Of a stretch of DNA of 33,026 nucleotides, positions 13,505-28,669 are shown piece by piece (within the stretch, counting starts at the first letter, position 1; each line of letters opens with the position of its first letter). The position numbers were made by a program, and so were the translations under genes. The stretch comes from Bigelowiella natans CCMP2755. Lineage: Eukaryota; Protista; Cercozoa. The DNA is taken from contig ADNK01002146.1 in the NCBI GenBank assembly GCA_000320545.1, positions 1 to 33,026 of the forward strand. Reading direction: 5' to 3'. The notes beneath the pieces were generated by a model, which made no database searches, was not told the DNA's origin, and worked only from the letters and a program-made list of their open reading frames with translations.

Positions 13505-14784
13505 TCATTGCTCTGCCTGCTTGAGTGGAGCTGCTTCCCACCCGCCACTACCGGATTTAGGAGAAGGTCCCGACAAATATGACGACGGTCGACTGGGAGG
13601 TTGAGTCCAGCCATTACGTGAAGTATGGCCCAAGAGCATGCCTCCATAGTATAAAGTAGCGTTGTATAAGCAGTAATACAAGATGATCTGGGATAAGAGC
13701 CACCAAGCCCCATTGACGAACTTAGCATCAATATGCAACAGCTTGCCGTTGGTTGAGATCCTACATATATCATGATTTAGTGGTCGTGATGGATGCACGA
13801 TGAAAGGTCACAGTACTAAAAGAGTGATGGGATGCGAAGTTCGTTGATGTAAATTGAACAGAAGTAGAATCCTTTTTGTGCGTTTTCCGTAAATATTTGG
13901 AATGTTGATGCTTTTCACATCTACTGTCATGTAAATATGCTATATTACGGTTCGATGAGAACGCAGAAGCTTTGTAGACTTCCAGCCTGCTCACACCAGC
14001 CCTGTAGCGTATGGCCCAGGATCCACACTGCCACCTATTGGTTAGATATAGGGTAGGAGGAGGAGGAGGAGGAGGGGGAGGAGGAGGGGGAGATGCTGTA
14101 AGTAGGATGGAGAATATTGCACGTACAAGTGTGTTTAGAAAATGTAATTCATGGTCACAATTCTTCTCTTCCTGAACCATGATAATTTCTCTCGCACACA
14201 TAAAATCATGTAAGTTTCAGGCACCTGATTAATCTCGAGAACGGCCGCGAAGCTGGCAATCCAAAACACTTCCAGCCCACAGAAGGACCATACTCGATTC
14301 ATAGCAGTGTATAGGTTTCGTTGGATGTTCTTCTTAAGCGGCACAAGCCAGAGCACGAGCCAGAGTGCCAGAATTGCCAAAGGAAGGGCCAGGACTAGTA
14401 TGCTGTGTAAGGGCATTATTATCTTAATTATGTAAATTCTGACGAGTGAGCGTGTTTTATAATGATCCTTATCAGGTCATATTTTTCCATGTCTCATCTT
14501 CGTTCGTTGTTGTTCTTCTTCTTTTCTCTTGACAAGCAAAGCAGTCAACTACTACCTGTACGCAACTGCTATCGTATAAGCCCCAGCAACCTCATCCGTG
14601 TTTTTCGGGAGGTCTTTGGGGAACGAGTAGACTTTGTAAGTGCGGATGATTTCGTACTGGCTTGGCCCAGGGAGCTCAGCTAGCACACCAGTCAATTTAA
14701 ACCTAGCAGCGTAATGGGGATGGTTGGCAGTAATAAGGTAACAGGAACGAGAGCTTGGAGAGAGGGAAAAGGGGGTGGGGATGT

Positions 14785-14817
<33 letters not shown>

Positions 14818-15113
14818 CACTACTAGAGCATGCGATTCAGTCGCATTAATATTTGGACGAAAAGGAGAGCGGGTGAGGATAATAAGTATTTATGTTTTGT
14901 TTTACAGTGAGTAGACTGAAAGGGGAAATAAATATTTTTAAGATTTTCTTCTTTTGGTTGGCTTGGCATAGCATGATTTTGACTGCTGCTAGCCCACTCA
15001 CTCACCAAGTCACGTCGTCTCGATATATGACAGCGAAGAGGGACACGGCAGCCATTAAGAACAGCACCACCAGCGACACATAGTGGATCCACTGAGCGCG
15101 AATGATCATATAC

Positions 15114-15149
<36 letters not shown>

Positions 15150-15209
15150 TATATTATCTCTTGTTTAAATCGAGATATGCATCTGTTGAAACTCAGTGCA
15201 TACACAATT

Positions 15210-15252
<43 letters not shown>

Positions 15253-15299
15253 ACGAAATTCACAGCTTCTATGGCTACTTCGGGAATTATTTTCCAACA

Positions 15300-15334
<35 letters not shown>

Positions 15335-18300
15335 AAATACTACCGATCTAATCCTGTTGTTGGGATTGTAATTTTGACCCCGCCGCCTCATACGACGAAT
15401 GTGCAGGCCCCAGAGGCTTCTACGTTTCTTCGACGGATGGTGTTTAGGCTCGAGCTAATCCCGATGACGACGACGACGACGACGACGACACAACAATGCA
15501 TATGCACGCAAACCACAAGAAAGAGAGAGTCAAGCACGTATTCATATCGAAAGAGCAAGGATATGAATAATATTCCATTATTACCAGCCCTCTCCCCCTC
15601 TTAATTACTACCTGGCTATTGTGGATATGCCAAAGCCAGTGGGTGGCGAAGAGGGTGGCGGTGGTGCTCGCAATACCGCCAAAGAGACCCTCCACAGGTT
15701 CTGCAGTGATTTTGACATCCCAACCAGCAATGTTGATCTCCTGCTTCATGACTAGCACAATGTAGCAAAGGAACATCACGTCAATGTATGACCCCTTGCC
15801 TACTTGCGTGAACAACATCAGCATACGGCCACGGAACGACGGCTTCATCGGAATGAACCAAGCAGCGAGCAGGGACATTTGGATCAAGAACGGCATCACG
15901 CACGAGCCCGCCACAATCAGCAGCGAGATGAGGTAGGCCCCTGATTTCCAGAAGTAGCGCACCATGTTGCCGAAGTTGAAGTCTATGATGTAGCTGTCGA
16001 GGACATCCATGCCGTCGGGTTGCTCGAATTCCATTCGCACGCGAGTGACCCGCACCACCAGCGCGAAGATTTTGATAGCGACTGCGGCTAGGATGAGACC
16101 CGGCACTAGCAGCTGATGGGCCCAACTGCGAGCAGTACCATCAGGCTGTAAGGGATAGTACTGACGAATGGAACTCCACGGCAACTCCTCCACCAACTCA
16201 GCATTAGTCTTGGTTTCCATGGGGGTCATTGCTTCCGAGTAGTCATCGGCCTGGCGCTTGGAGTAGATTTTCCATCCAAGGCAGCCGATGCCGAACACGA
16301 ACGCCCACGTCCCTGCGACCACCATGAATAAGAGTGTCCATGAGGCCAGTCCGTGGTCTTGCCCGCTCGCGGGCAGGGGCGGGATCTGCCCGGCACAATA
16401 GTAGGGAGCATTGACCATCTCTTGCTGGATCCCGGAGTTGACCGATGAGCTAATGGTCTCGGGTATCTGGCCTTTGAGATTCCCGACGATGCTCCAAAGG
16501 GTGGGGGACAGCTTCTTGATCAGGTCCTCCAGACTGGTCCAGCTGTTGTCGAAATTCAGCGCTACCATAGCATCGTCGAGCTGCAGGCTGGTTATGGTGA
16601 AGTTCCACACATCGACGTAGTTTGCGAGGAAGCACACCCCCTCGGCAGCGGTCGGGTCGTTCATTGTATCGAGGGGATGTGTCTCCAAGTACTCCAGGAC
16701 GGTTGTGTTGAGGAAGGAGTTCTCTATCGTAAGATCTTGCAGTAGCGCGAAGTGCAGATCGTGCACGGTGGTGTTGATCAGGAACCGGGTAAGTGGCCCG
16801 TCATTGATCGAGAAGGTCAGGTCGAAAAACACGTCTATCGGTCGCTGATTCCCGATCCCGAGCGTTGATTGTATCATTGTGGGCGCGGCTGCGTCCAATA
16901 ACGAGGTGTTGTAAAAAGTATTGTGAACCCCGGACACGTCCAGCTGATTTATGTTTACGAACAGCTTCACCCCCGCGAGCACGAGGGTCTTCGAGAAGGT
17001 CAAGTTTAAGCTGATCGTATCGTTCGGTACCAACGCGTCGCCGATGGTGTTGAGAAGCTGGTCATCAATGTAGGAGAGAAGTGTGACAGGAGGATACTTT
17101 TCCCAATCAAACAGCTTTTCCTCGGGATACTTCCTACACCCGCTCAACTCCAAGTCAATCACATCACCCACCAGTTCGTTCACAATAGGCCGCACAGCCG
17201 CGTTGGCGATACGGGCAGCACTTTTGGAGATGTAAGGCCCGTCCGTCAACAAGAGGTAACGAAAGATGTCGTTCACGAGCGTCGCGAGTTCACTCTCCAG
17301 GGCACCGTTGGCTGCCATTGTAATTTGATTCAAAGATACAGCAGCGTCTATATATGAGACGTTGAAGCTGTAGAGGATCTTGGGCCAGCAGCCTATCTGC
17401 CCGACCTCGTTCAAGGTCAGTTCTAAAAGCGACAGTGAATCGAGCCCAAGGATTATATCGCCTCCTAGCTTGAGGTTCGTCGCGGACAGGGAAACGAGAA
17501 GGTTCTCCACCAGTGGCGGCTGTGTGCTTGTCGTCACGTTTACGGTTATATTCATCACAAGATCAATTTTCTGTGTTAAAAGCTCCGTGGCTAAGATGTA
17601 CGAGTCCTCAGGATACATCACCTCGAGTAGCTGCGTGCTATTTAGTCCTGAGATATCGACCTGGTGGACTATCACTGATAGGCCCAAGTCAGGAGTTTGA
17701 AGAATGCCGTCAAACTCAAGCTCCAGCTCCAATCGAAATACTCCCGTCCCATGTGACAGCACGTTGACAATGTCAGCTATGCTTACACTGCCGTTGGGCC
17801 CGAGTATATTGTAGACAGATTCTGAGGCTTCGCGGAAGATTTTCATCTTCGTGAGGTTGAAAATGGTGTCGGGCATAACTGGTGTAGGAAGGGCAGGCGG
17901 TACTGGCTTTTCAAGCTCGGTGTCGATCATGTCAAGAATTGCCGTTAGGTTTTTGGACACGAGGTTTTCTACCTCTTTATTGATGATTGGATCCACTTGG
18001 CCGGGGAGAAAGGGCTTCAATAGGGGGGTGAGCACCTCAATTAAGAACGACTGAATACCGCTCCCGTGGAAGTGAAGATCCTGTACTGTAGACTTTGTTT
18101 TGCAGGTTCCGCTGGCAGCGGCTGGGATTGGGCTTGAAAAATTGGTCTTTATGGTCACATCCAAGTCTAATGTCGCTGAGGCAGTGAAATCGAAATCTCC
18201 CTGTGCATGAACCTAGAAGGGACATAGAAATATGTCACCCACATTTTAAAGTAAATAACGTGGTGTACTTACATCTCCAATTATGATGATGTGCGTGTCC

Positions 18301-18815
18301 ACATCATAACGGCCGTTGCACGAGAGGTCTAGCTTCCCGATATCCACAGTGAGCTAATGAATCGACGCGGGAGTAACAAGACATATACTTAGAACTATAA
18401 ACTTTAAGAGAGTGCAGACATTCTGGAATAGGCATCTGTTGGGTCTTCCTCACCTGATCTGGAGGAAGGAATTTGGATTCCACATTGTTCGCCACAAAAT
18501 TGGTGCATTTCAGTTCATGAAGTCGAACCAAGCTGCCAGCGAGAGTGGTTGTTATATTCGGGAGGTGTATATCAAAATCGTAGATCCATCGTGAAAGGGG
18601 GCTGAAATGTTACATAAAGTTTAAGGACAGGAATTCAGGTTAAATTTCGAGCGCAGAAAATTAAAATTTTATGATCACATCCATCGTGTGCATCGATTTG
18701 GTACTGGGAATGTCCGCAAACGGAATATACTTAAATTTGTTTGTGCGCGAATGTACCTGTCTGCTCGAGCCCCAAGGGCTAGGAAAAAATAGAGGAGAGA
18801 CAGGGCTCGAAACAT
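13505..18815 (-). CDS. ~1,250 aa membrane protein: signal peptide + BPI/LBP-like (TULIP) luminal repeats + TM + two PqiA/LetA-like (paraquat-inducible protein A) membrane domains, ~10 exons
   Basis: Exon 1 18815-18757 MFRALSLLYFFLALGARA (signal peptide). Exons 2-4 read ...LDLSCNGRYDV...AQGDFDFTASATLDLDVTI...P...GTCKTKSTVQDLHFHGSGIQSFLIEVLTPLLKPFL (BPI N-terminal-like). Exon 4 is 18212-15612. PqiA-like repeat 1: NMVRYFWKSGAYLISLLIVAGSCVMP...QVGKGSYIDVMFLCYIV. Repeat 2 from six downstream exons: ...AYTIAVAYSILVLALP...RVWSFCGLEVFWIASFAAVLEI...DAKFVNGAWWLL; TGA at 13507-13505. Confidence 0.85.
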
Positions 18816-22106: not shown

Positions 22107-22273
22107 TCAGAACGATCTGATTGCGAAGTTCGTTGCCTGCTCGAAGCCTTCCCAGCGTCCCGAGAAAGCAATCTTGAACTCCCCACCTATTGTAACCCCC
22201 TCGGGAAATGCTAATTGACTGCCCTCCGAGAAATCACCTAGTTTGGATCATCAAATAGAGCCCGATCACAATC

Positions 22274-22315
<42 letters not shown>

Positions 22316-23442
22316 CAGAGAAAGGTAGAAGACAACGGAACAAATCAAGCGATTATCACCAACCGGGGACATATCTTGCGGCGCAGCTGTCTGGTGGTAG
22401 AAGACCGAGAAACTTGTAGCCCTCGGCGACCTGAGGACAACGAATCTCAACGGAATATCACAATCGCGGGCAGAATGCGTGATCAGATGATTCAAAGACC
22501 GTAGTTTTCGACCAAATGATAATTTGGGAGACGAGAGGAAAAAAAAGGCAAGAAAAGCAGCGCTGTAAGAGATGAAGCAATGTTACGAATGAAGGGAACA
22601 TCTTGGATTCAATCGATGTGTCTTCTTCGTGCTCAGGCGCATGTATATGATATGATGATTGCCGTACGATTTCCGAGCAGAAATAAGTCCGTGCCGGGTC
22701 GTTCCAATTGCGCAAGGTTCCTCCGCAGATCAAACCGCACAGATTCAATCCATATCTATAATCAAACAGGAGAAGGAGGAGGAGGGGGTGGAGGAGGAGG
22801 AGGAGGAGGATGGGAGCGTCAAGAATAACGGCAGGGGGCGCAGCATTCAATCTTTCAATCTATTTATCTTTTTACCATCATCATCATAATCATCATAATC
22901 ATCATAGTCATCATCATCATCATCATCATCTTACACACACTACATTCACTTATTTTTCATCCCAATTCCACAGATTACTTTTTTCCGTTGACAGCATCAG
23001 CAAACTCCTCCAGCCGCTCACCCAAATGACCACGCCGCCCCCGCGCTGTGTGCCAGTGATTACAGGCAATGCATCAATAATATTGTAAAATCTCGTCGAT
23101 ATGGCTGCTACTATCAGCGTCATAGTGCTGCTGCTGCTGCCTCTGCTGATGGTGTAATTGCCCGACAGCACCCACAAACCGTTTACGTAATGTGTGTCAC
23201 ATACAATATATACTAATTCTTAATATTGTGAATATGGCTAGCACATGCTCATTCTATCATACTTCTGCTGCTTCTTCTTCTTCCTCCCATGTTGTTGTTT
23301 TTGTTGTTGTTGTCTTTCATGAGTCTACCAGGCCAATTGAGGCGTCGAAGGACGATTCTGCAGTAGTCCTTATGCCATCCTTGTTCCGCGAAATGGTGCC
23401 ATGCACTCACAGACACCCCTGATTTTAATATCGCAGAGAGGG

Positions 23443-23491
<49 letters not shown>

Positions 23492-24005
23492 AAGAGGAAA
23501 AGCAATGGTGACGGGGGGGGGGATGGGGATATGTGAGAGAGAGTTGTGAAATGCCTTCTGCAAGCGCCTCAATAAGCCTAGTGTCGCCCTCTGGAGTCTT
23601 AAGCACAAGGCCCACATGATCGTACGCGGAGAATGTTCCTATGAGAGGGGGGGGGGGGGGGATGGGGAGGGACAACGATGAAAAGGAATGATAGACATTC
23701 ACGCAGAAACGAGAGTAGCAGCTAGAAGTAGTTGAAGCTTGCATAATTAATCCTCCAACCATACTGCTGCTTGCTACTACTCAGTACTCAGAATTCATTC
23801 GCCCAATCACTGCATTAAAGGACGCTTTGGAACGGAAGTAGCACCCGTGAAGTATTATCCTTTAATTGTACTATTATAATTCTGTTTAAGTACTACCAAG
23901 GCGAACGGCTGCAGAGCCAATACCCTTGCCTGTGAGGGAGGGGGCAGAGGTGAAAAGCACTAAATCCCCGGTCTCCACCATCTCCGGTATGTGCTCTTGC
24001 GGTAT
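22107..24005 (-). CDS. Permuted papain-like NlpC/P60 (YiiX/YaeF, C92-type) amidase/acyltransferase domain; probably the C-terminus of the upstream transporter gene
   Basis: Exons give ETGDLVLFT...AVRLG|TFSAYDHVGLVL...RLIEALAEG|VSVSAWHHF...RIVLRRL...LEEFADAVNGKK|YGLN...RTYFCSEI|VAEGYKFLGLLPPD...YVPG|DFSEG...*. His motif (YDHVG) precedes Cys motif (YFCSE), i.e. the circularly permuted order. TGA 22109-22107. Confidence 0.88.
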
Positions 24006-24085
24006 CTGGTGATTGGAAGATTGAATTGATTCAACGGAGGGGTAGGGGGGGAGCAGATGTATCCTACTTGGGAGGCTACTACTAC

Positions 24086-25511
24086 GCAGCAATCAGCAGT
24101 GTAGCGCCTTTACTTTGTGGTGCTCATCATCATCATCATCATTATCGTAATCATCCTTATCATCATCATCATCATCATAATCATCATCATTATCTCGGCG
24201 ATGTAAGACCCATTCGCCTTTGTAGTATCTGAGTGACTCGTTGGCTTCGGGTATCGAAGGCGGCTCGCGAGAGCGCCTGTGATAAATATACTGCTGTATC
24301 ATTTGCTTGCTTCCAGGGTTCACATCATTTTTCACTCTCCCTTCTCTATACATTCATTCGTAAGGGAGGGGATTACGACAATTCTACTACTACTGCTGCT
24401 GCTACCGATAAAAGAAAGAGCTGCTCCAACCAATAACCATTCCGAAAACAGCACCCCATCCTAAGTACATGCCGGTGACAAGGACCAAAAACGATGTTAC
24501 CAGAGCAGCAGTAGCAGCAGCAATCGAGAAAGGAATCTTGATGGGTTAGCTTGATGGTATGAAACATTTCTTCACCACCACCACAATCACCACTCTCTCT
24601 CCTGCCCCCCTTCCAACAACTGCCCTCCCCACCCGTAACAACGGCCAGCCCCACTTGCTTGTGAAACTGCTGTTATTCTTAGTTCTAGTAGTAGCAGCAG
24701 CAGCAGCAGTATTACCTATATTCTCGCCTAATATCGAAACACCACCGATTACGATGATGGCGTCGGTCCCTGCCGCTAGAGGTAGTAGGAGAGGTAAGAA
24801 ATATCAGGGGAGGGAGAGGCAGCAGAGAAGAGTATTAGCAGCAGCAGCAGCAGCAGAAGAAGAAGCAGAAGAAGAAGAAGGAGAAGAAGAAGAAGAAGAA
24901 GAAATCATGCTTCAACTGGCACTATGCTCTACTACTCTCCTCCACCTCCTAACAGCTACACCACCAATCGCTGCTTACTTGCAAGTGAGATCACAGGGAG
25001 GGGCGCTGCAATCGCCACAACCGACCCGCATAGTACCGATGCTGATGATCAGATATAAAGGTGGGGGAACTGGTGAACAATAACAATAGTAACAATAATA
25101 ACGACAATGATAATAATAATAAAAATAATAAAAGAGACTTCATCATTATCATGGTCATCATCAGCAAACGGCCTTGTCAGCAGTCATAAGTATCCATTGC
25201 CACCGGTGGAGTACCGCGCACCATCATCACCACCACCGCCACATCCCACCACTGCACTTTCCCTTTCTAATCTCTCTATTTCTTCTTCTTCTTTCAAGAT
25301 GTTTGCTAAGCAGCGCACCAAAATAGAGAAAGCCATTGATGAGGAAAGCTGGCAGCCCCACAACGGCAACCTACCGCCGACGACAAACACATACAAGAAC
25401 CAGATTGTAAGAGTAATAATAGTAATAAATAATAACGGGAATCATATCGCCAATGAATCATGACAATGTGCAAAAGAGAGAGAAGGAAGAGGAGAAGAGT
25501 AGGAGGAGGAG

Positions 25512-25551
<40 letters not shown>

Positions 25552-27004
25552 ATCTCTCTCTCTCAAACCTGTTCCCATGTGACTGTGTACGACTCCGTCG
25601 CAAGGAAAAACAGGAGGGTGAAGATGGTCGCTACAGGCGCAGCGTGGCAAATTATCGACGGGAGAGTAAGGGCGAGGGGAGAACTGTGCGCAACAGGGAT
25701 ATGGTGCTGCTGCTGCGGCTGATGATCCATAATGTCGGAAGGAGAGTTGGGAGGAGCTCCTCCAGAGTACTTAACATCATTGGAACCGTCATCTCCATCG
25801 TTGATGTTCAAATTCCCCGCGCTCAGGGACCGAGTCTCTGAGAACACGCACATGCACACACACACACACAATTGTAGGAGGAGGAAGAGGAGGAGGAGGA
25901 GGAGGGAAAACTCTGAGCAACCACAACCAAAGAAAAAGGGCCGATCATGCGTTGTTCGTGAAATCCATCCTTCTCTTCCACAACCACGTATTGAACTAAA
26001 ATCAGTGCGTTGAAGTAGTAGTAGTAGTAGTGGTAGTAGTAGTAGTAGTAGTAGTAGATGCTCAAGTGGCATCATCATCATCAGAATCCCCTCACCTGCA
26101 AACGCTGTAGCAGCAGTGAGAATCATCACTGAAAACAACCAATTGGCGCCCAATTGAGCGGTAATTCCCAACGCTGTACTGTCGCCTGGCAGCATGGAAA
26201 ATGATAACTGAATCATGCCAGAAGAAGAGGAGGTGGGGAGGCATAATCCATGCGACAACTATGCCACCAATGACGGCCAAAAGGAGCAATTTTATGCAAA
26301 ATAGATCATGATGATGATGATGATGATGACGAAGAAGAAAAGAAAGAGGAAATAAGCAGCACCTTTTGAAGAGGCGATACAGATGAATATGCACGCGGCT
26401 GTGGACACGATGATGTGGCACGCAGCGGAGCGAGTCGATGCTTCGAATCTAGAGATAACGACGTGACGTGCAGCACCGAATAGAATGAAGAAGAAGAAGA
26501 GGTTGATGATGCCAGTGGAGAAGAGAGATAAGCACCAACGACAGCAGCAAACAAAGAAGCACACAACAGAGAGATATAAAAGAACGATCCATCAGAACAA
26601 CGAATGCTGTTGCATTCACTTAATGCTGCTACCCTCACAACGATCATCATCGTCATCATCGTCATCATCGTCATCAATACCATTCCACCATCGTCATCAC
26701 CATATTAACATCGTATTCCCTCACATGTATGCATATGCATGCAAAGAGGGGAAGGGAAGAGGAGGAGGAGGAGGAGGAGGAGGAGGGGAGAGGAGGGCAA
26801 AGTATCGACCCGAAGAGAACAAATCCCATCCCGAAAAACATGAGCTGGGTTGAAGACAGCATGCGAATTACGCTACGAAGAAGAGAGGGGAGACAAGGAC
26901 AGCGATGGATGATGGAATCGTAGGCAATCAGGAATAACAGAAGGTGATGGGGATGATGATGATGATAATGGAAGAAACGGTGAGTGTACTGACACATTCC
27001 CGAC

Positions 27005-27060
<56 letters not shown>

Positions 27061-27188
27061 AAAACCTGCCTCATCCGCCCTTCAATACATATCTAAACCT
27101 CATCAAGCAGCAGCAGTAGCAGCGGTATATACCACGCGCCACCACACCGTTTCATCCCACCTTATATAACCGCAAAATCTTCCCCACC

Positions 27189-27222
<34 letters not shown>

Positions 27223-27561
27223 TACAACCCACTACTACTGCTGCTGCTGATAATTGTGTTGCCCCGACCTGAGTTCAAGCTTGGTCATCGCGACGTTGGA
27301 GAGGATCATATAACTCGAGAAACTAAGTGATACAAATAGCACCCTGAGCAAATAACTTCCCCATCCTAAGTCTTTGGCCCCATTTGCCGACGAAGAGAAC
27401 AAGCTGGTAGTGTGCTTCGCAACCTGGCCGATTTAATAAGGGAAGTAGTCAATTAAGCGGAATATTTTACGGCTTCTCAACAAAACATCGCATGTCATTA
27501 ACTATGATCATCATCGCCATTCACATCACTCTCCATGATCACTATCATCGAAAAGGGCAAT

Positions 27562-27595
<34 letters not shown>

Positions 27596-28669
27596 GCAAC
27601 AACAACAGCAACAACAACAGCAACAATAACAACAACAACAACAGCAACAACAACAGCAACAACAACAACAACAACAACAGCAACAACAACAGCAACAACA
27701 ACAGCAACAATAACAACAACAACAACAACAGCAACAATAACAACAGCAACAACAACAGCAATAACAACAACAACAACAGCAACAACAACAGCAACAAAAT
27801 CGTTGTACCTGCGTGCATATGAGGACCACTACCATTTGCAGCAGCGTCACAAGAAGCGGAAACGGTGCCTCTGCAAAACATATTCTCAGTAAGAATAATT
27901 GAATTATATTCGAATTGAAATCCTAGGCCCATTGATTCAACTTGACCCGTCACAGGAAACCCTCCGCTTCCCTCCCCAGAAAAACACTTCACTCCCCGTC
28001 ATTTTCTCGTTGATAAAAATCTAGTTGGTAGCGAAGACGCACATACTTTTCAGCAACCAATTGTTGTAAAACATGTAGGCGACTGCGCAGGGAACGGATA
28101 TTCCAATACTAATCCAAAGATTGGTGCCCCCGCAATACTGCGGTCGGCTGTGGCCATAGTCTTTGATCCCAACCCCCCCCCTGAAAACAATGAACTCAGT
28201 GCGACCATATCGTGACGATATAGGTGGATAAAGCTTACGGTGGGACTTTCATAGGGACCCCCATGTCCCCCCTTGACATACTCTGATTATATTGACAAGA
28301 AAGATCACGTCATCACAATTGTAACACATGCAGCCGCTTTCATCATCATCTTTTTCCTCTATTTCTCCGATCCACAACCTTGTTGAGGAGAGGCTCCTGG
28401 TCCTAATGACACATATTTGTCAATAAATTCACGGAAACTGACGCTCAAAGATTCAATGCGAAGTTAGGCACGAAGAAGCGGGCATGAGGGATCAAACCGG
28501 GTCATCCATTGGCACAGCGGTTCCAATCCCTTGATAATTATGCCAATAATATCTGCCTTAATTGCTTGTCGCATAGGTATTTTCGCCTGTATTCTAGAAG
28601 ATGATACCGGTCGAGATTGGGAACTACCAGCTCGTGAATTCTTCGGCGAGCAGAAACAATTTTGCCCAT
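24086..28669 (-). CDS. SLC35/triose-phosphate-transporter-like (DMT superfamily) multi-pass membrane region, N-terminal part of the same probable gene
   Basis: Start MGKIVSARR (ATG 28669). Exons give AYMFYNNWLLK|KAPFPLLVTLLQMVVVLICTQ, SYLLRVLFVSLSFSSYMILSNVAMTKLELS|VIRMLSSTQLMFFGMGFVLFG|FE, GITAQLGANWLF, SIICHAAPVATIFTLLFFLATE, AFLINGFLYF, LVTSFLVLVTGISIFITG. The NxWLL...PFPxxxTxxQ and LSNxA...S motifs are typical of NST/TPT transporters. Junctions around 24550-25050 are not fully resolved. Confidence 0.72.
27559..27797. repeat. ~240 bp (AAC)n/(AGC) trinucleotide tract with recurring AAC-AAC-AAC-AGC higher-order unit, intronic
   Basis: Directly visible; lies inside the intron between exons ...LICTQ and VAKHTT... 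of the minus-strand transporter. Confidence 0.92.

What the first reader, a model, noticed from the sequence alone, without database searches (positions are those of the whole stretch)
13505..18815. Single-chain TULIP + double PqiA/LetA fusion: candidate eukaryotic lipid-transport machine
Seen: cleavable signal peptide; a ~700 aa luminal region with a BPI/LBP-like first domain and two further related repeats (VIVHQVDISGLNST vs VNINQLDVSGVHNT) rich in N-x-S/T sites; a TM helix; then two PqiA-like membrane repeats. I see no CxxC zinc-ribbon motifs. Established: bacterial PqiA/LetA are inner-membrane partners of the MCE tunnel proteins PqiB/LetB in lipid transport, and TULIP domains are tubular lipid carriers. 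Inference: TULIP repeats replace the MCE tunnel, giving a self-contained luminal or extracellular lipid conduit coupled to a membrane extractor. It could serve lipid uptake from prey in lysosomes or transfer across complex-plastid membranes. PqiA-annotated proteins are known in other protists, so the novelty is in the architecture and function.
Basis: partly seen in the sequence, partly recalled or inferred. Interest (0 to 1): 0.8.

Follow-up and report, generated by a model that had tools for sequence, protein, structure and literature searches.

The report
Triple-TULIP plus LetA-like lipid transporter
This is a real ten-exon gene of the alga Bigelowiella natans that encodes three lipid-carrying TULIP barrels fused to a bacterial-type LetA/PqiA membrane lipid transporter, a protein class ("TUPALs") already described in 2017 and 2026, so it is a further member and not a new kind of machine.

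Summary
On the minus strand, ATG 18815 to stop 13505, ten GT-AG exons encode 1250 aa. Two complete MMETSP transcripts cover the whole ORF. JGI model Bigna1/89770 is identical to the window but skips exon 5.

The anatomy is:
- a signal peptide;
- three homologous BPI-like TULIP modules (aa ~20-196, 220-452, 470-702);
- one TM anchor;
- a two-module LetA/PqiA membrane domain with no zinc ribbons.

The AF2 models are confident (pLDDT 86.6 and 85.9). The ectodomain's top PDB hits are BPI, CETP, LBP, Der p 7, Takeout and JHBP. The membrane domain hits E. coli LetA uniquely (Z 14.3, next ~8). Module 3 is a duplicate of module 2 (hhalign E 4e-11).

BPI/CETP proteins anchored by PqiA were noted by Wong & Levine in 2017. 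The LetA paper (Nature 2026) noted them too. A 2026 preprint on PfTUPA named the class TUPALs and showed lipid recycling from a digestive vacuole.

What differs here is the third TULIP module, seen only in chlorarachniophytes and one metagenomic protein. B. natans has at least three such paralogs. Function and location remain inferred. The scan holds no earlier report of this on other DNA.

The parts
13505..18815 (-). Whole gene: 10 exons, 1250-aa ORF (Bigelowiella natans, JGI Bigna1 protein 89770)
   Evidence: Exon mapping of transcript protein P0001 on the window. All introns are GT-AG. P0153 is identical to the window exons.
18757..18815 (-). Exon 1: signal peptide (aa 1-18, A-x-A cleavage motif) and the first residues of the mature protein
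   Evidence: Read from the sequence. The ortholog P0002 also starts with a hydrophobic leader. No predictor was run.
17913..18601 (-). TULIP module 1 (aa ~20-196; exons 2 and 3 and the start of exon 4), a BPI N-terminal-like domain
   Evidence: Pfam LBP_BPI_CETP E 1.1e-3, aa 31-180 against profile 20-168/168, and JHBP E 7.9e-3; both are below cut-off. Relatives P0003, P0006 and P0011 reach the cut-off. The part folded (aa 97-196) forms two long strands and a 48-residue helix.
17145..17843 (-). TULIP module 2 (aa ~220-452)
   Evidence: AF2 model residues 122-353 align with BBP (Z 8.1, 197 of 221 residues), Takeout (Z 7.7), Der f 7 and JHBP. hhalign module 2 against module 1: 92.6% probability, E 4.6e-7.
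16395..17093 (-). TULIP module 3 (aa ~470-702), an extra module restricted to this lineage
   Evidence: hhalign module 3 against module 2: 97.2% probability, E 4.3e-11, 202 columns. It has the same helix, long-strand and ~45-residue-helix pattern, mostly at pLDDT 85-94 (one block of 10 residues falls to 61). CETP, BPI and LBP alignments run on into it, and Mmm1 SMP aligns at Z 5.3. It was detected only in clusters P0001-P0005.
16266..16343 (-). Single TM anchor (aa ~720-745) linking the luminal array to the cytosolic start of the membrane domain
   Evidence: Hydropathy peak at aa 723-745. AF2 helix at model residues 624-648.
15612..16145 (-). LetA/PqiA-like module 1 (aa ~786-963; 4 TM helices and luminal beta-hairpins)
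   Evidence: Pfam PqiA best stretch at aa 846-919. hhalign to LetA TMD-C: 90.8% probability, E 1.2e-6, with Ser866, Pro870, Gly901-Lys902, Ser904 and Asp907 matching LetA S321, P325, G361-R362, S364 and D367. AF2 and LetA fold match.
15344..15454 (-). Exon 5: 37-aa basic cytosolic linker between the two membrane modules, sitting where LetA has its second zinc ribbon; it has no Cys
   Evidence: Present in P0001, P0152 and the ortholog P0002, but skipped in JGI model P0153. Low pLDDT in the model.
13637..15091 (-). LetA/PqiA-like module 2 (aa ~1001-1207; exons 6-10)
   Evidence: A second PqiA stretch in Pfam. hhalign to LetA TMD-C E 5.4e-5, with Pro1083 and Glu1120 in place of LetA P325 and D367. 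The LetA structural alignment covers model residues 26-448.
13505..13636 (-). C-terminal cytosolic tail (aa ~1208-1250, Pro/Ser/Gly-rich, predicted disordered) and stop codon
   Evidence: pLDDT below 50 at model residues 451-488.

Best explanation
The gene encodes a TUPAL-class lipid transfer protein (TULIP plus PqiA/LetA-like) of Bigelowiella natans.

Topology (inferred). A cleaved signal peptide puts three tandem BPI-like TULIP modules into the lumen of a secretory or endolysosomal compartment, or outside the cell. One TM helix returns the chain to the cytosol. Eight further helices then form a LetA-type pseudodimer whose beta-sheets face the same side as the TULIP array.

Mechanism (inferred). 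By analogy with E. coli LetAB and Plasmodium PfTUPA, the TULIP array binds lipids from luminal or extracellular sources such as internal membranes, prey or lipase products. It passes them to the LetA-like domain, or receives them from it. That domain inserts them into, or extracts them from, the limiting membrane.

Shown here: the gene structure, the single transcript, the three homologous TULIP-fold modules, the LetA fold, and the absence of zinc ribbons. Inferred: topology, lipid binding, direction of transfer, energy source and location.
For: - Gene and transcript.
- TULIP ectodomain: sub-threshold Pfam LBP_BPI_CETP and JHBP matches with near-full profile coverage. AF2 pLDDT 86.6. The leading Foldseek hits are TULIP-superfamily proteins (BPI 3.6e-7, CETP 6.3e-7, Der p 7, LBP, JHBP, Takeout). 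VIA Z 7-8.1 over a whole module. Module homology: hhalign E 4.3e-11 and 4.6e-7.
- LetA domain: Pfam PqiA with 2 stretches, E 6.5e-4. Family profile against PDB LetA (9n8w_A) E 4.3e-7. AF2 pLDDT 85.9, pTM 0.86. Foldseek's only significant hit is LetA, E 1.8e-5. VIA Z 14.3 over 316 residues, then claudins and TARPs at ~8, the same pattern the LetA paper reports (PMC13017536).
- Transitive homology: 265 relatives at E<=1e-3. Most have module 1, module 2 and two PqiA modules, and some pass both Pfam cut-offs.
- Literature: the class is described and PfTUPA was tested functionally.
- Location: 15 sequons lie in the ectodomain, which fits passage through the ER and Golgi.
Against: - This protein itself falls below Pfam's gathering scores for both PqiA (20.1 against 23.8 bits) and LBP_BPI_CETP (19.1 against 28.8 bits).
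- The first 77 mature residues of module 1 were not folded, because they lie in other exons.
- The membrane model was made from a 90%-identical fragment (P0154), not from the window's own sequence.
- The match of module 3 to solved TULIPs is weaker (Z ~5) than that of module 2.
- No coordinates were available, so no hydrophobic cavity or end-to-end arrangement was verified.
- The Lys equivalent to LetA K328, which is Lys or Arg in 30 of 42 family members, is Ile here (aa 873). The Trp of the G-R-W-S motif is Gly. The polar network may therefore be partly degenerate.
- No experimental data exist for any chlorarachniophyte member.
Confidence: 0.8

Rival explanations
1. It is a cell-surface pattern-recognition or defence protein. 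The BPI/LBP-like array binds bacterial lipopolysaccharide or other hydrophobic ligands outside the cell, for prey or pathogen recognition. The LetA-like domain serves mainly as a membrane anchor or signal transducer and not as a lipid pump.
For: The closest solved folds include BPI and LBP, which bind LPS. Wong & Levine placed such proteins at the plasma membrane. The Lys of the LetA polar network is lost in this protein.
Against: The LetA-type fold and the Ser/Pro/Ser/Asp signature are conserved across 42 eukaryotic relatives, which argues for a retained activity. The fusion recurs with different TULIP types across eukaryotes, and in PfTUPA it is needed for lipid clearance.
Confidence: 0.1
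2. It is a lipid conduit of the complex plastid. The protein sits in one of the four plastid envelope membranes and moves lipids across an inter-membrane space, standing in for the TGD/MCE system.
For: No MlaD/MCE Pfam match was found in a six-frame search of the nuclear assembly. The three modules could span a fixed gap.
Against: The mature protein starts with TULIP module 1 directly after the signal peptide. That leaves no transit-peptide-like extension of the kind chlorarachniophyte plastid proteins need (background knowledge, not tested here). Relatives occur in non-photosynthetic amoebae such as Balamuthia. The many sequons point to the ER-Golgi route. The MCE search is exon-by-exon, and absence is not proven.
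Confidence: 0.05
3. The third module is a structural spacer or stalk that has lost lipid binding. Only modules 1 and 2 would then form a BPI-like two-barrel carrier, as in ordinary 2xBPI TUPALs.
For: Module 3 matches solved TULIPs less well (Z ~5). It is absent from most relatives.
Against: It is a clear duplicate of module 2 (E 4.3e-11), with the same secondary-structure pattern at high pLDDT. It is kept in at least three B. natans paralogs and in other chlorarachniophytes.
Confidence: 0.15

Closest known systems
TUPAL class / PfTUPA of Plasmodium falciparum (Guillen-Samander et al., bioRxiv 10.64898/2026.09.11.750981)
   Same: One polypeptide combines a two-module PqiA/LetA-like membrane domain without zinc ribbons with extracytoplasmic TULIP (BPI-like) domain(s). 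The TULIP is joined to the membrane part through a TM helix. The proposed role is lipid transfer between a lumen and its limiting membrane. The N-terminal placement of the BPI-like domains matches the '2xBPI' TUPALs described in several lineages.
   Different: PfTUPA has a single, divergent ApiTULIP at the C-terminus. The described N-terminal types have one or two BPI-like domains, whereas this protein has three. No localisation or phenotype is known for it.
E. coli LetA (YebS; PDB 9n8w) and PqiA
   Same: A pseudodimer of two four-helix tetraspanin-like modules with extracytoplasmic beta-sheets (Z 14.3, 316 residues aligned). G-[KR]-x-S-x-x-D-type motif and conserved Ser/Pro positions.
   Different: There are no cytoplasmic zinc ribbons. 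The partner is not a separate MCE hexamer (LetB/PqiB) but TULIP modules fused in cis. The polar-network signature lies in the first module, not the second, and the Lys is replaced by Ile. Identity is only ~12-13%.
BPI / LBP / CETP (Pfam PF01273, PF02886) and single-domain TULIPs (Takeout, JHBP, Der p 7, BBP)
   Same: Each module has the helix, long twisted beta-sheet and long helix of the TULIP fold. Module 1 aligns with the BPI N-terminal Pfam profile over nearly its full length.
   Different: Those proteins are soluble secreted proteins with one or two barrels. This one is membrane-tethered, has three barrels, and is fused to a transporter-like domain. It scores below the Pfam cut-off.
Balamuthia mandrillaris KAL6068024.1 (P0006, 2232 aa)
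   Same: Same family: a BPI-like first module, repeated module-2-like units, and two PqiA modules that pass both Pfam cut-offs.
   Different: It has four module-2-like repeats after module 1 (five in all), and it comes from an amoebozoan. Its extra modules are not detectably module-3-type.

Membership tests
TUPAL class (TULIP + PqiA fusion) | Two-module PqiA/LetA-like transmembrane domain | tested here: met
   Profile hit to LetA E 4.3e-7. Foldseek's only significant hit is LetA. VIA Z 14.3. The fold was made on P0154, which is 90% identical to aa 761-1250.
TUPAL class (TULIP + PqiA fusion) | TULIP-superfamily domain in the same polypeptide | tested here: met
   AF2 model plus Foldseek and VIA. 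The single transcript spans both parts.
TUPAL class (TULIP + PqiA fusion) | TULIP on the extracytoplasmic side, the same side as the PqiA beta-sheets | tested here: inconclusive
   This is predicted only, from the signal peptide, 15 ectodomain sequons, one TM anchor and then 4+4 helices. No experiment and no dedicated topology predictor was available.
TUPAL class (TULIP + PqiA fusion) | Hydrophobic lipid-binding cavity in the TULIP domain | not testable with these tools
Pfam PF04403 PqiA | Score at or above the gathering cut-off (23.8 bits) | tested here: not met
   20.1 bits, E 6.5e-4, 2 stretches. The paralog on C3701 (56.5 bits) and relatives P0006, P0011 and P0014 pass.
Pfam PF01273 LBP_BPI_CETP (N-terminal domain) | Score at or above the gathering cut-off (28.8 bits) | tested here: not met
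   19.1 bits, E 1.1e-3, profile 20-168/168. Relatives P0003 (28.8), P0006 (30.0) and P0011 (33.1) reach it.
Bacterial LetA family | Cytoplasmic zinc-ribbon (4 Cys) before each TM module | tested here: not met
   There is no C-x-x-C anywhere, and no Cys in either cytosolic segment (aa 746-789, 964-1000). The LetA paper reports the same for eukaryotic LetA-like proteins.
Bacterial LetA family | GRWSM-psi-D-psi-F motif and polar network (S321, K328, S364, D367, T402) | tested here: inconclusive
   Module 1 keeps Ser866, Pro870, Gly901-Lys902, Ser904, Asp907 and Thr949, but has Ile873 for K328 and Gly903 for W363. Module 2 has Cys1117 and Glu1120. The alignments have 66-91% probability.
Bacterial LetA family | Separate MCE-domain partner (LetB/PqiB) | tested here: not met
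   There is no MlaD/MCE Pfam match in the six-frame search of the genome. Absence is not proven, because domains split by introns could be missed.

The most novel reading that the evidence does not exclude
The number of tandem TULIP modules in PqiA-fused proteins may be tuned to the distance to be bridged. There are three in chlorarachniophytes, five in Balamuthia, and probably more in 2000-3200-aa metagenomic relatives. On this reading the array is a rigid, end-to-end, bridge-like conduit and not a shuttle. It would be a modular eukaryotic counterpart of the stacked MCE rings of LetB, with the membrane-proximal module docking on the LetA-like pocket.
Probability: 0.2. Interest if true: 0.6.

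Novelty: new member of a known kind. Interest (0 to 1): 0.3.

Why it matters
Lipid handling in protist lysosomes and food vacuoles is poorly understood. The TUPAL class was functionally defined only in 2026, and only in Plasmodium. This gene shows that a free-living, genetically sequenced rhizarian alga carries at least three paralogs of the class, each with a three-barrel TULIP array. Relatives elsewhere carry longer arrays. That gives a natural series for asking whether TULIP arrays act as shuttles or as bridges, and how a LetA-type domain works without zinc ribbons or an MCE partner. The gene itself does not open a new category.

Tried and rejected
- phmmer of the main exon against PDB sequences found nothing. 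Only the family profile reached LetA.
- The first word search found only the transcript and one ortholog. The exhaustive search was needed to see the family.
The exon mapping was redone from the files only.
- Full-length P0001 (1250 aa) and P0153 (1213 aa) exceed the 1200-aa fold limit. The ectodomain was therefore folded from exon 4 alone (aa 97-745) and the membrane domain from database fragment P0154. No exon-joined model was built or searched; exons were handled one at a time by reference.
- ESM Atlas hits for the ectodomain (0.79-0.85) are leads only.
- The six-frame PF01273 search of the genome found nothing, but its controls did not ring either, so it is uninformative.
- Rejected: a gene-model fusion artefact (transcripts span it all), a plastid-targeted protein (no room for a transit peptide), and kappa-opioid receptor hits at E~1e-3 (TM composition noise).
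Full report
**Gene and organism.**
- The finding lies on the minus strand. Six-frame translation shows a signal-peptide exon starting at 18815, a 2.6-kb main exon and several short downstream exons.
- A word search with the main exon returned P0001, a complete 1250-aa MMETSP transcript ORF that is 99% identical. It also returned P0002, a 1264-aa protein of the chlorarachniophyte Norrisiella sphaerica at 46% identity.
- The cluster of P0001 also holds a second complete transcript (P0152) and JGI model Bigna1/89770 of Bigelowiella natans (P0153).
- P0153 is identical to the window over all nine exons it uses. P0001 differs at three residues. The window is therefore B. natans nuclear DNA, contig C1591 of a 91.4-Mb assembly.
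- Mapping P0001 back exon by exon gives ten exons with canonical GT-AG borders: 18815-18757, 18601-18454, 18353-18273, 18212-15612, 15454-15344, 15091-15006, 14702-14556, 14402-14225, 14034-13949 and 13760-13505. They sum to 3753 nt.
- I compared exons one at a time and built no joined model. Every full-length analysis used database proteins by id.

**Linear features.**
- The protein has a hydrophobic leader ending A-R-A.
- The ectodomain is ~700 aa and holds 15 of the 16 N-x-S/T sequons.
- A hydrophobic anchor sits at aa 723-745, followed by eight further hydrophobic segments.
- There is no C-x-x-C motif.

**Family scans.** On full-length P0001, Pfam gives only sub-threshold matches:
- PqiA, E 6.5e-4, two stretches;
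- LBP_BPI_CETP N-terminal domain, E 1.1e-3, aa 31-180 covering profile positions 20-168 of 168;
- JHBP, E 7.9e-3.

ESM Atlas features point the same way. The ectodomain gives TULIP-clan leads at 0.79-0.85. The membrane part gives eukaryotic PqiA clusters at 0.92, with all 30 hits in that family.

**Relatives.**
- The exhaustive HMMER search with exon 4 found 265 relatives at E<=1e-3.
- I cut P0001 into five segments and ran local phmmer against the hits. The usual relative is 1000-1100 aa with module 1, module 2 and two PqiA modules.
- The third module (aa 481-720) is detectable only in five clusters. These are B. natans, Norrisiella, Amorphochlora amoebiformis (P0004/P0160), another MMETSP transcript (P0003), and one intronless ORF on a metagenome scaffold (P0005).
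- Some relatives have longer arrays. Balamuthia mandrillaris KAL6068024.1 (2232 aa) has module 1 plus four module-2-like repeats.
- Relatives pass Pfam's cut-offs for both families (P0006 and P0011; P0003 for LBP_BPI_CETP). Homology is therefore established transitively.

**Are the three modules related?**
- Profile-profile comparison is clear. Module 3 against module 2 gives 97.2% probability, E 4.3e-11, over 202 columns. Module 2 against module 1 gives 92.6%, E 4.6e-7.

**Ectodomain fold.**
- AF2 on aa 97-745 with a 58-row alignment gave mean pLDDT 86.6 and pTM 0.67.
- The model shows three repeats of short helices, five or six long strands and a 45-50-residue helix, followed by the anchor helix.
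- Foldseek against the PDB returns mainly TULIP-superfamily proteins at the top: BPI 3.6e-7, CETP 6.3e-7, Der p 7, LBP, Der f 7, JHBP, BBP and Takeout. The bridge-like LPD-3 complex (9cap) also appears, at rank 12 (E 6.6e-5). SPLUNC1 and OrfX2 follow at weaker E-values (2.4e-3 to 4.4e-2).
- VIA-align places single-barrel TULIPs on module 2: BBP Z 8.1 with 197 of 221 residues aligned, and Takeout Z 7.7.
- The two-barrel proteins span modules 2 and 3 with large rmsd, so the inter-module geometry differs from the BPI boomerang. Mmm1 SMP aligns to module 3 at Z 5.3.
- I could not fold module 3 alone or inspect coordinates. A cavity and an end-to-end arrangement remain untested.

**Membrane domain.**
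- A profile of 42 eukaryotic membrane domains hits E. coli LetA (YebS, 9n8w_A) at E 4.3e-7. The next hits are opioid-receptor noise at ~1e-3.
- AF2 on P0154, a database fragment 90% identical to aa 761-1250, gave pLDDT 85.9 and pTM 0.86. It shows two units of TM helix, hairpin, two TM helices, hairpin and TM helix.
- Foldseek's only significant hit is LetA (E 1.8e-5, 441 columns). VIA gives Z 14.3 over 316 residues, followed by claudins and TARPs at ~8. The LetA paper reports the same neighbourhood for LetA itself.
- I took LetA from the E. coli K-12 record and aligned it to the family profile. The signature of LetA's second module (S321, P325, K328, G-R-W-S364-x-x-D367) turns up in the first module of the eukaryotic family.
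- This protein keeps Ser866, Pro870, Gly901-Lys902, Ser904, Asp907 and Thr949. It has Ile873 for the lysine and Gly903 for the tryptophan. Module 2 has Glu1120 for the aspartate.
- The cytosolic segments that replace the zinc ribbons hold no cysteine.

**Literature.**
- Wong & Levine 2017 (PMC5507252) already noted protist and amoebal CETP/BPI proteins anchored by a C-terminal PqiA domain.
- The LetA paper (PMC13017536) noted LetA-like proteins without zinc ribbons in parasites and marine protists, some fused to extracytoplasmic lipid-transfer-like domains.
- Guillen-Samander et al. (bioRxiv 10.64898/2026.09.11.750981) named the class TUPALs. They surveyed it across SAR, Discoba, Haptista, Amoebozoa and other clades, described one or two BPI-like domains fused at the N- or C-terminus, and showed that PfTUPA sits in the digestive-vacuole membrane with its TULIP in the lumen. 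PfTUPA is needed to clear internal membranes.

**What is particular here.**
- The protein has a third TULIP module, a duplicate of module 2.
- B. natans has at least three paralogs with three modules each, on C1591, C2647 and C3701. It has further PqiA-type loci on C3222 and C1488.
- A six-frame search found no MlaD/MCE domain in the assembly. This does not prove absence.
- Module 1 follows the signal peptide directly. A plastid location is therefore unlikely; this rests on background knowledge of bipartite targeting signals and was not tested.

**Verdict.** The gene is a further member of a known class, with a modest architectural variation. Function, location, direction of transfer and energy source are inferred by analogy.

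Noticed in passing
window 15344-15454 (-): Exon 5 (111 nt, 37 basic residues) is skipped in JGI model Bigna1/89770. Both MMETSP transcripts keep it, and it is conserved in the Norrisiella ortholog. The public gene model is probably missing an exon, or the exon is alternatively spliced.
   Followed up: partly
window 14055-15489: Introns 4-8 of the gene carry microsatellites: (CGA)n 15462-15489, (ACT)n 15300-15343, (AG)19 15213-15250, (AT)19 15117-15154, (TAC)n 14785-14825 and (AGG)n 14055-14092.
   Followed up: no
G000:C3701 (L004:4349-7579, -) and G000:C2647 (L007:292-3403, -): These are two further B. natans paralogs with the same layout: a BPI-like first module, two more TULIP-like modules, a TM anchor and PqiA modules. 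The C3701 copy passes the Pfam PqiA cut-off. C2647 has long Ser, Asp and Arg low-complexity inserts.
   Followed up: partly
P0006 (Balamuthia mandrillaris KAL6068024.1), P0038, P0090: These are relatives of 2000-3200 aa with repeated module-2-like units before the PqiA domain. Balamuthia has four such units and the other two have at least two each. Such arrays are longer than the one or two BPI-like domains described for TUPALs.
   Followed up: partly
L009:3001-7257 (+), ENA ERZ23491500 scaffold_7510: The only carrier of module 3 outside chlorarachniophytes (P0005, 1418 aa) is an intronless ORF. It lies on a tightly packed metagenome scaffold, where the upstream gene ends 2 nt before it. The organism is unknown.
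   Followed up: no
family alignment A2, P0001 aa 866-907: In the eukaryotic family, the polar-network signature of LetA's second TM module sits in the first module. The two modules may have swapped roles, or the fusion may derive from a differently ordered ancestor.
   Followed up: partly
window 22107-28669: The scan holds another first-reader note for this window, on an SLC35/TPT-like transporter fused to a permuted NlpC/P60 enzyme. I did not examine it.
   Followed up: no
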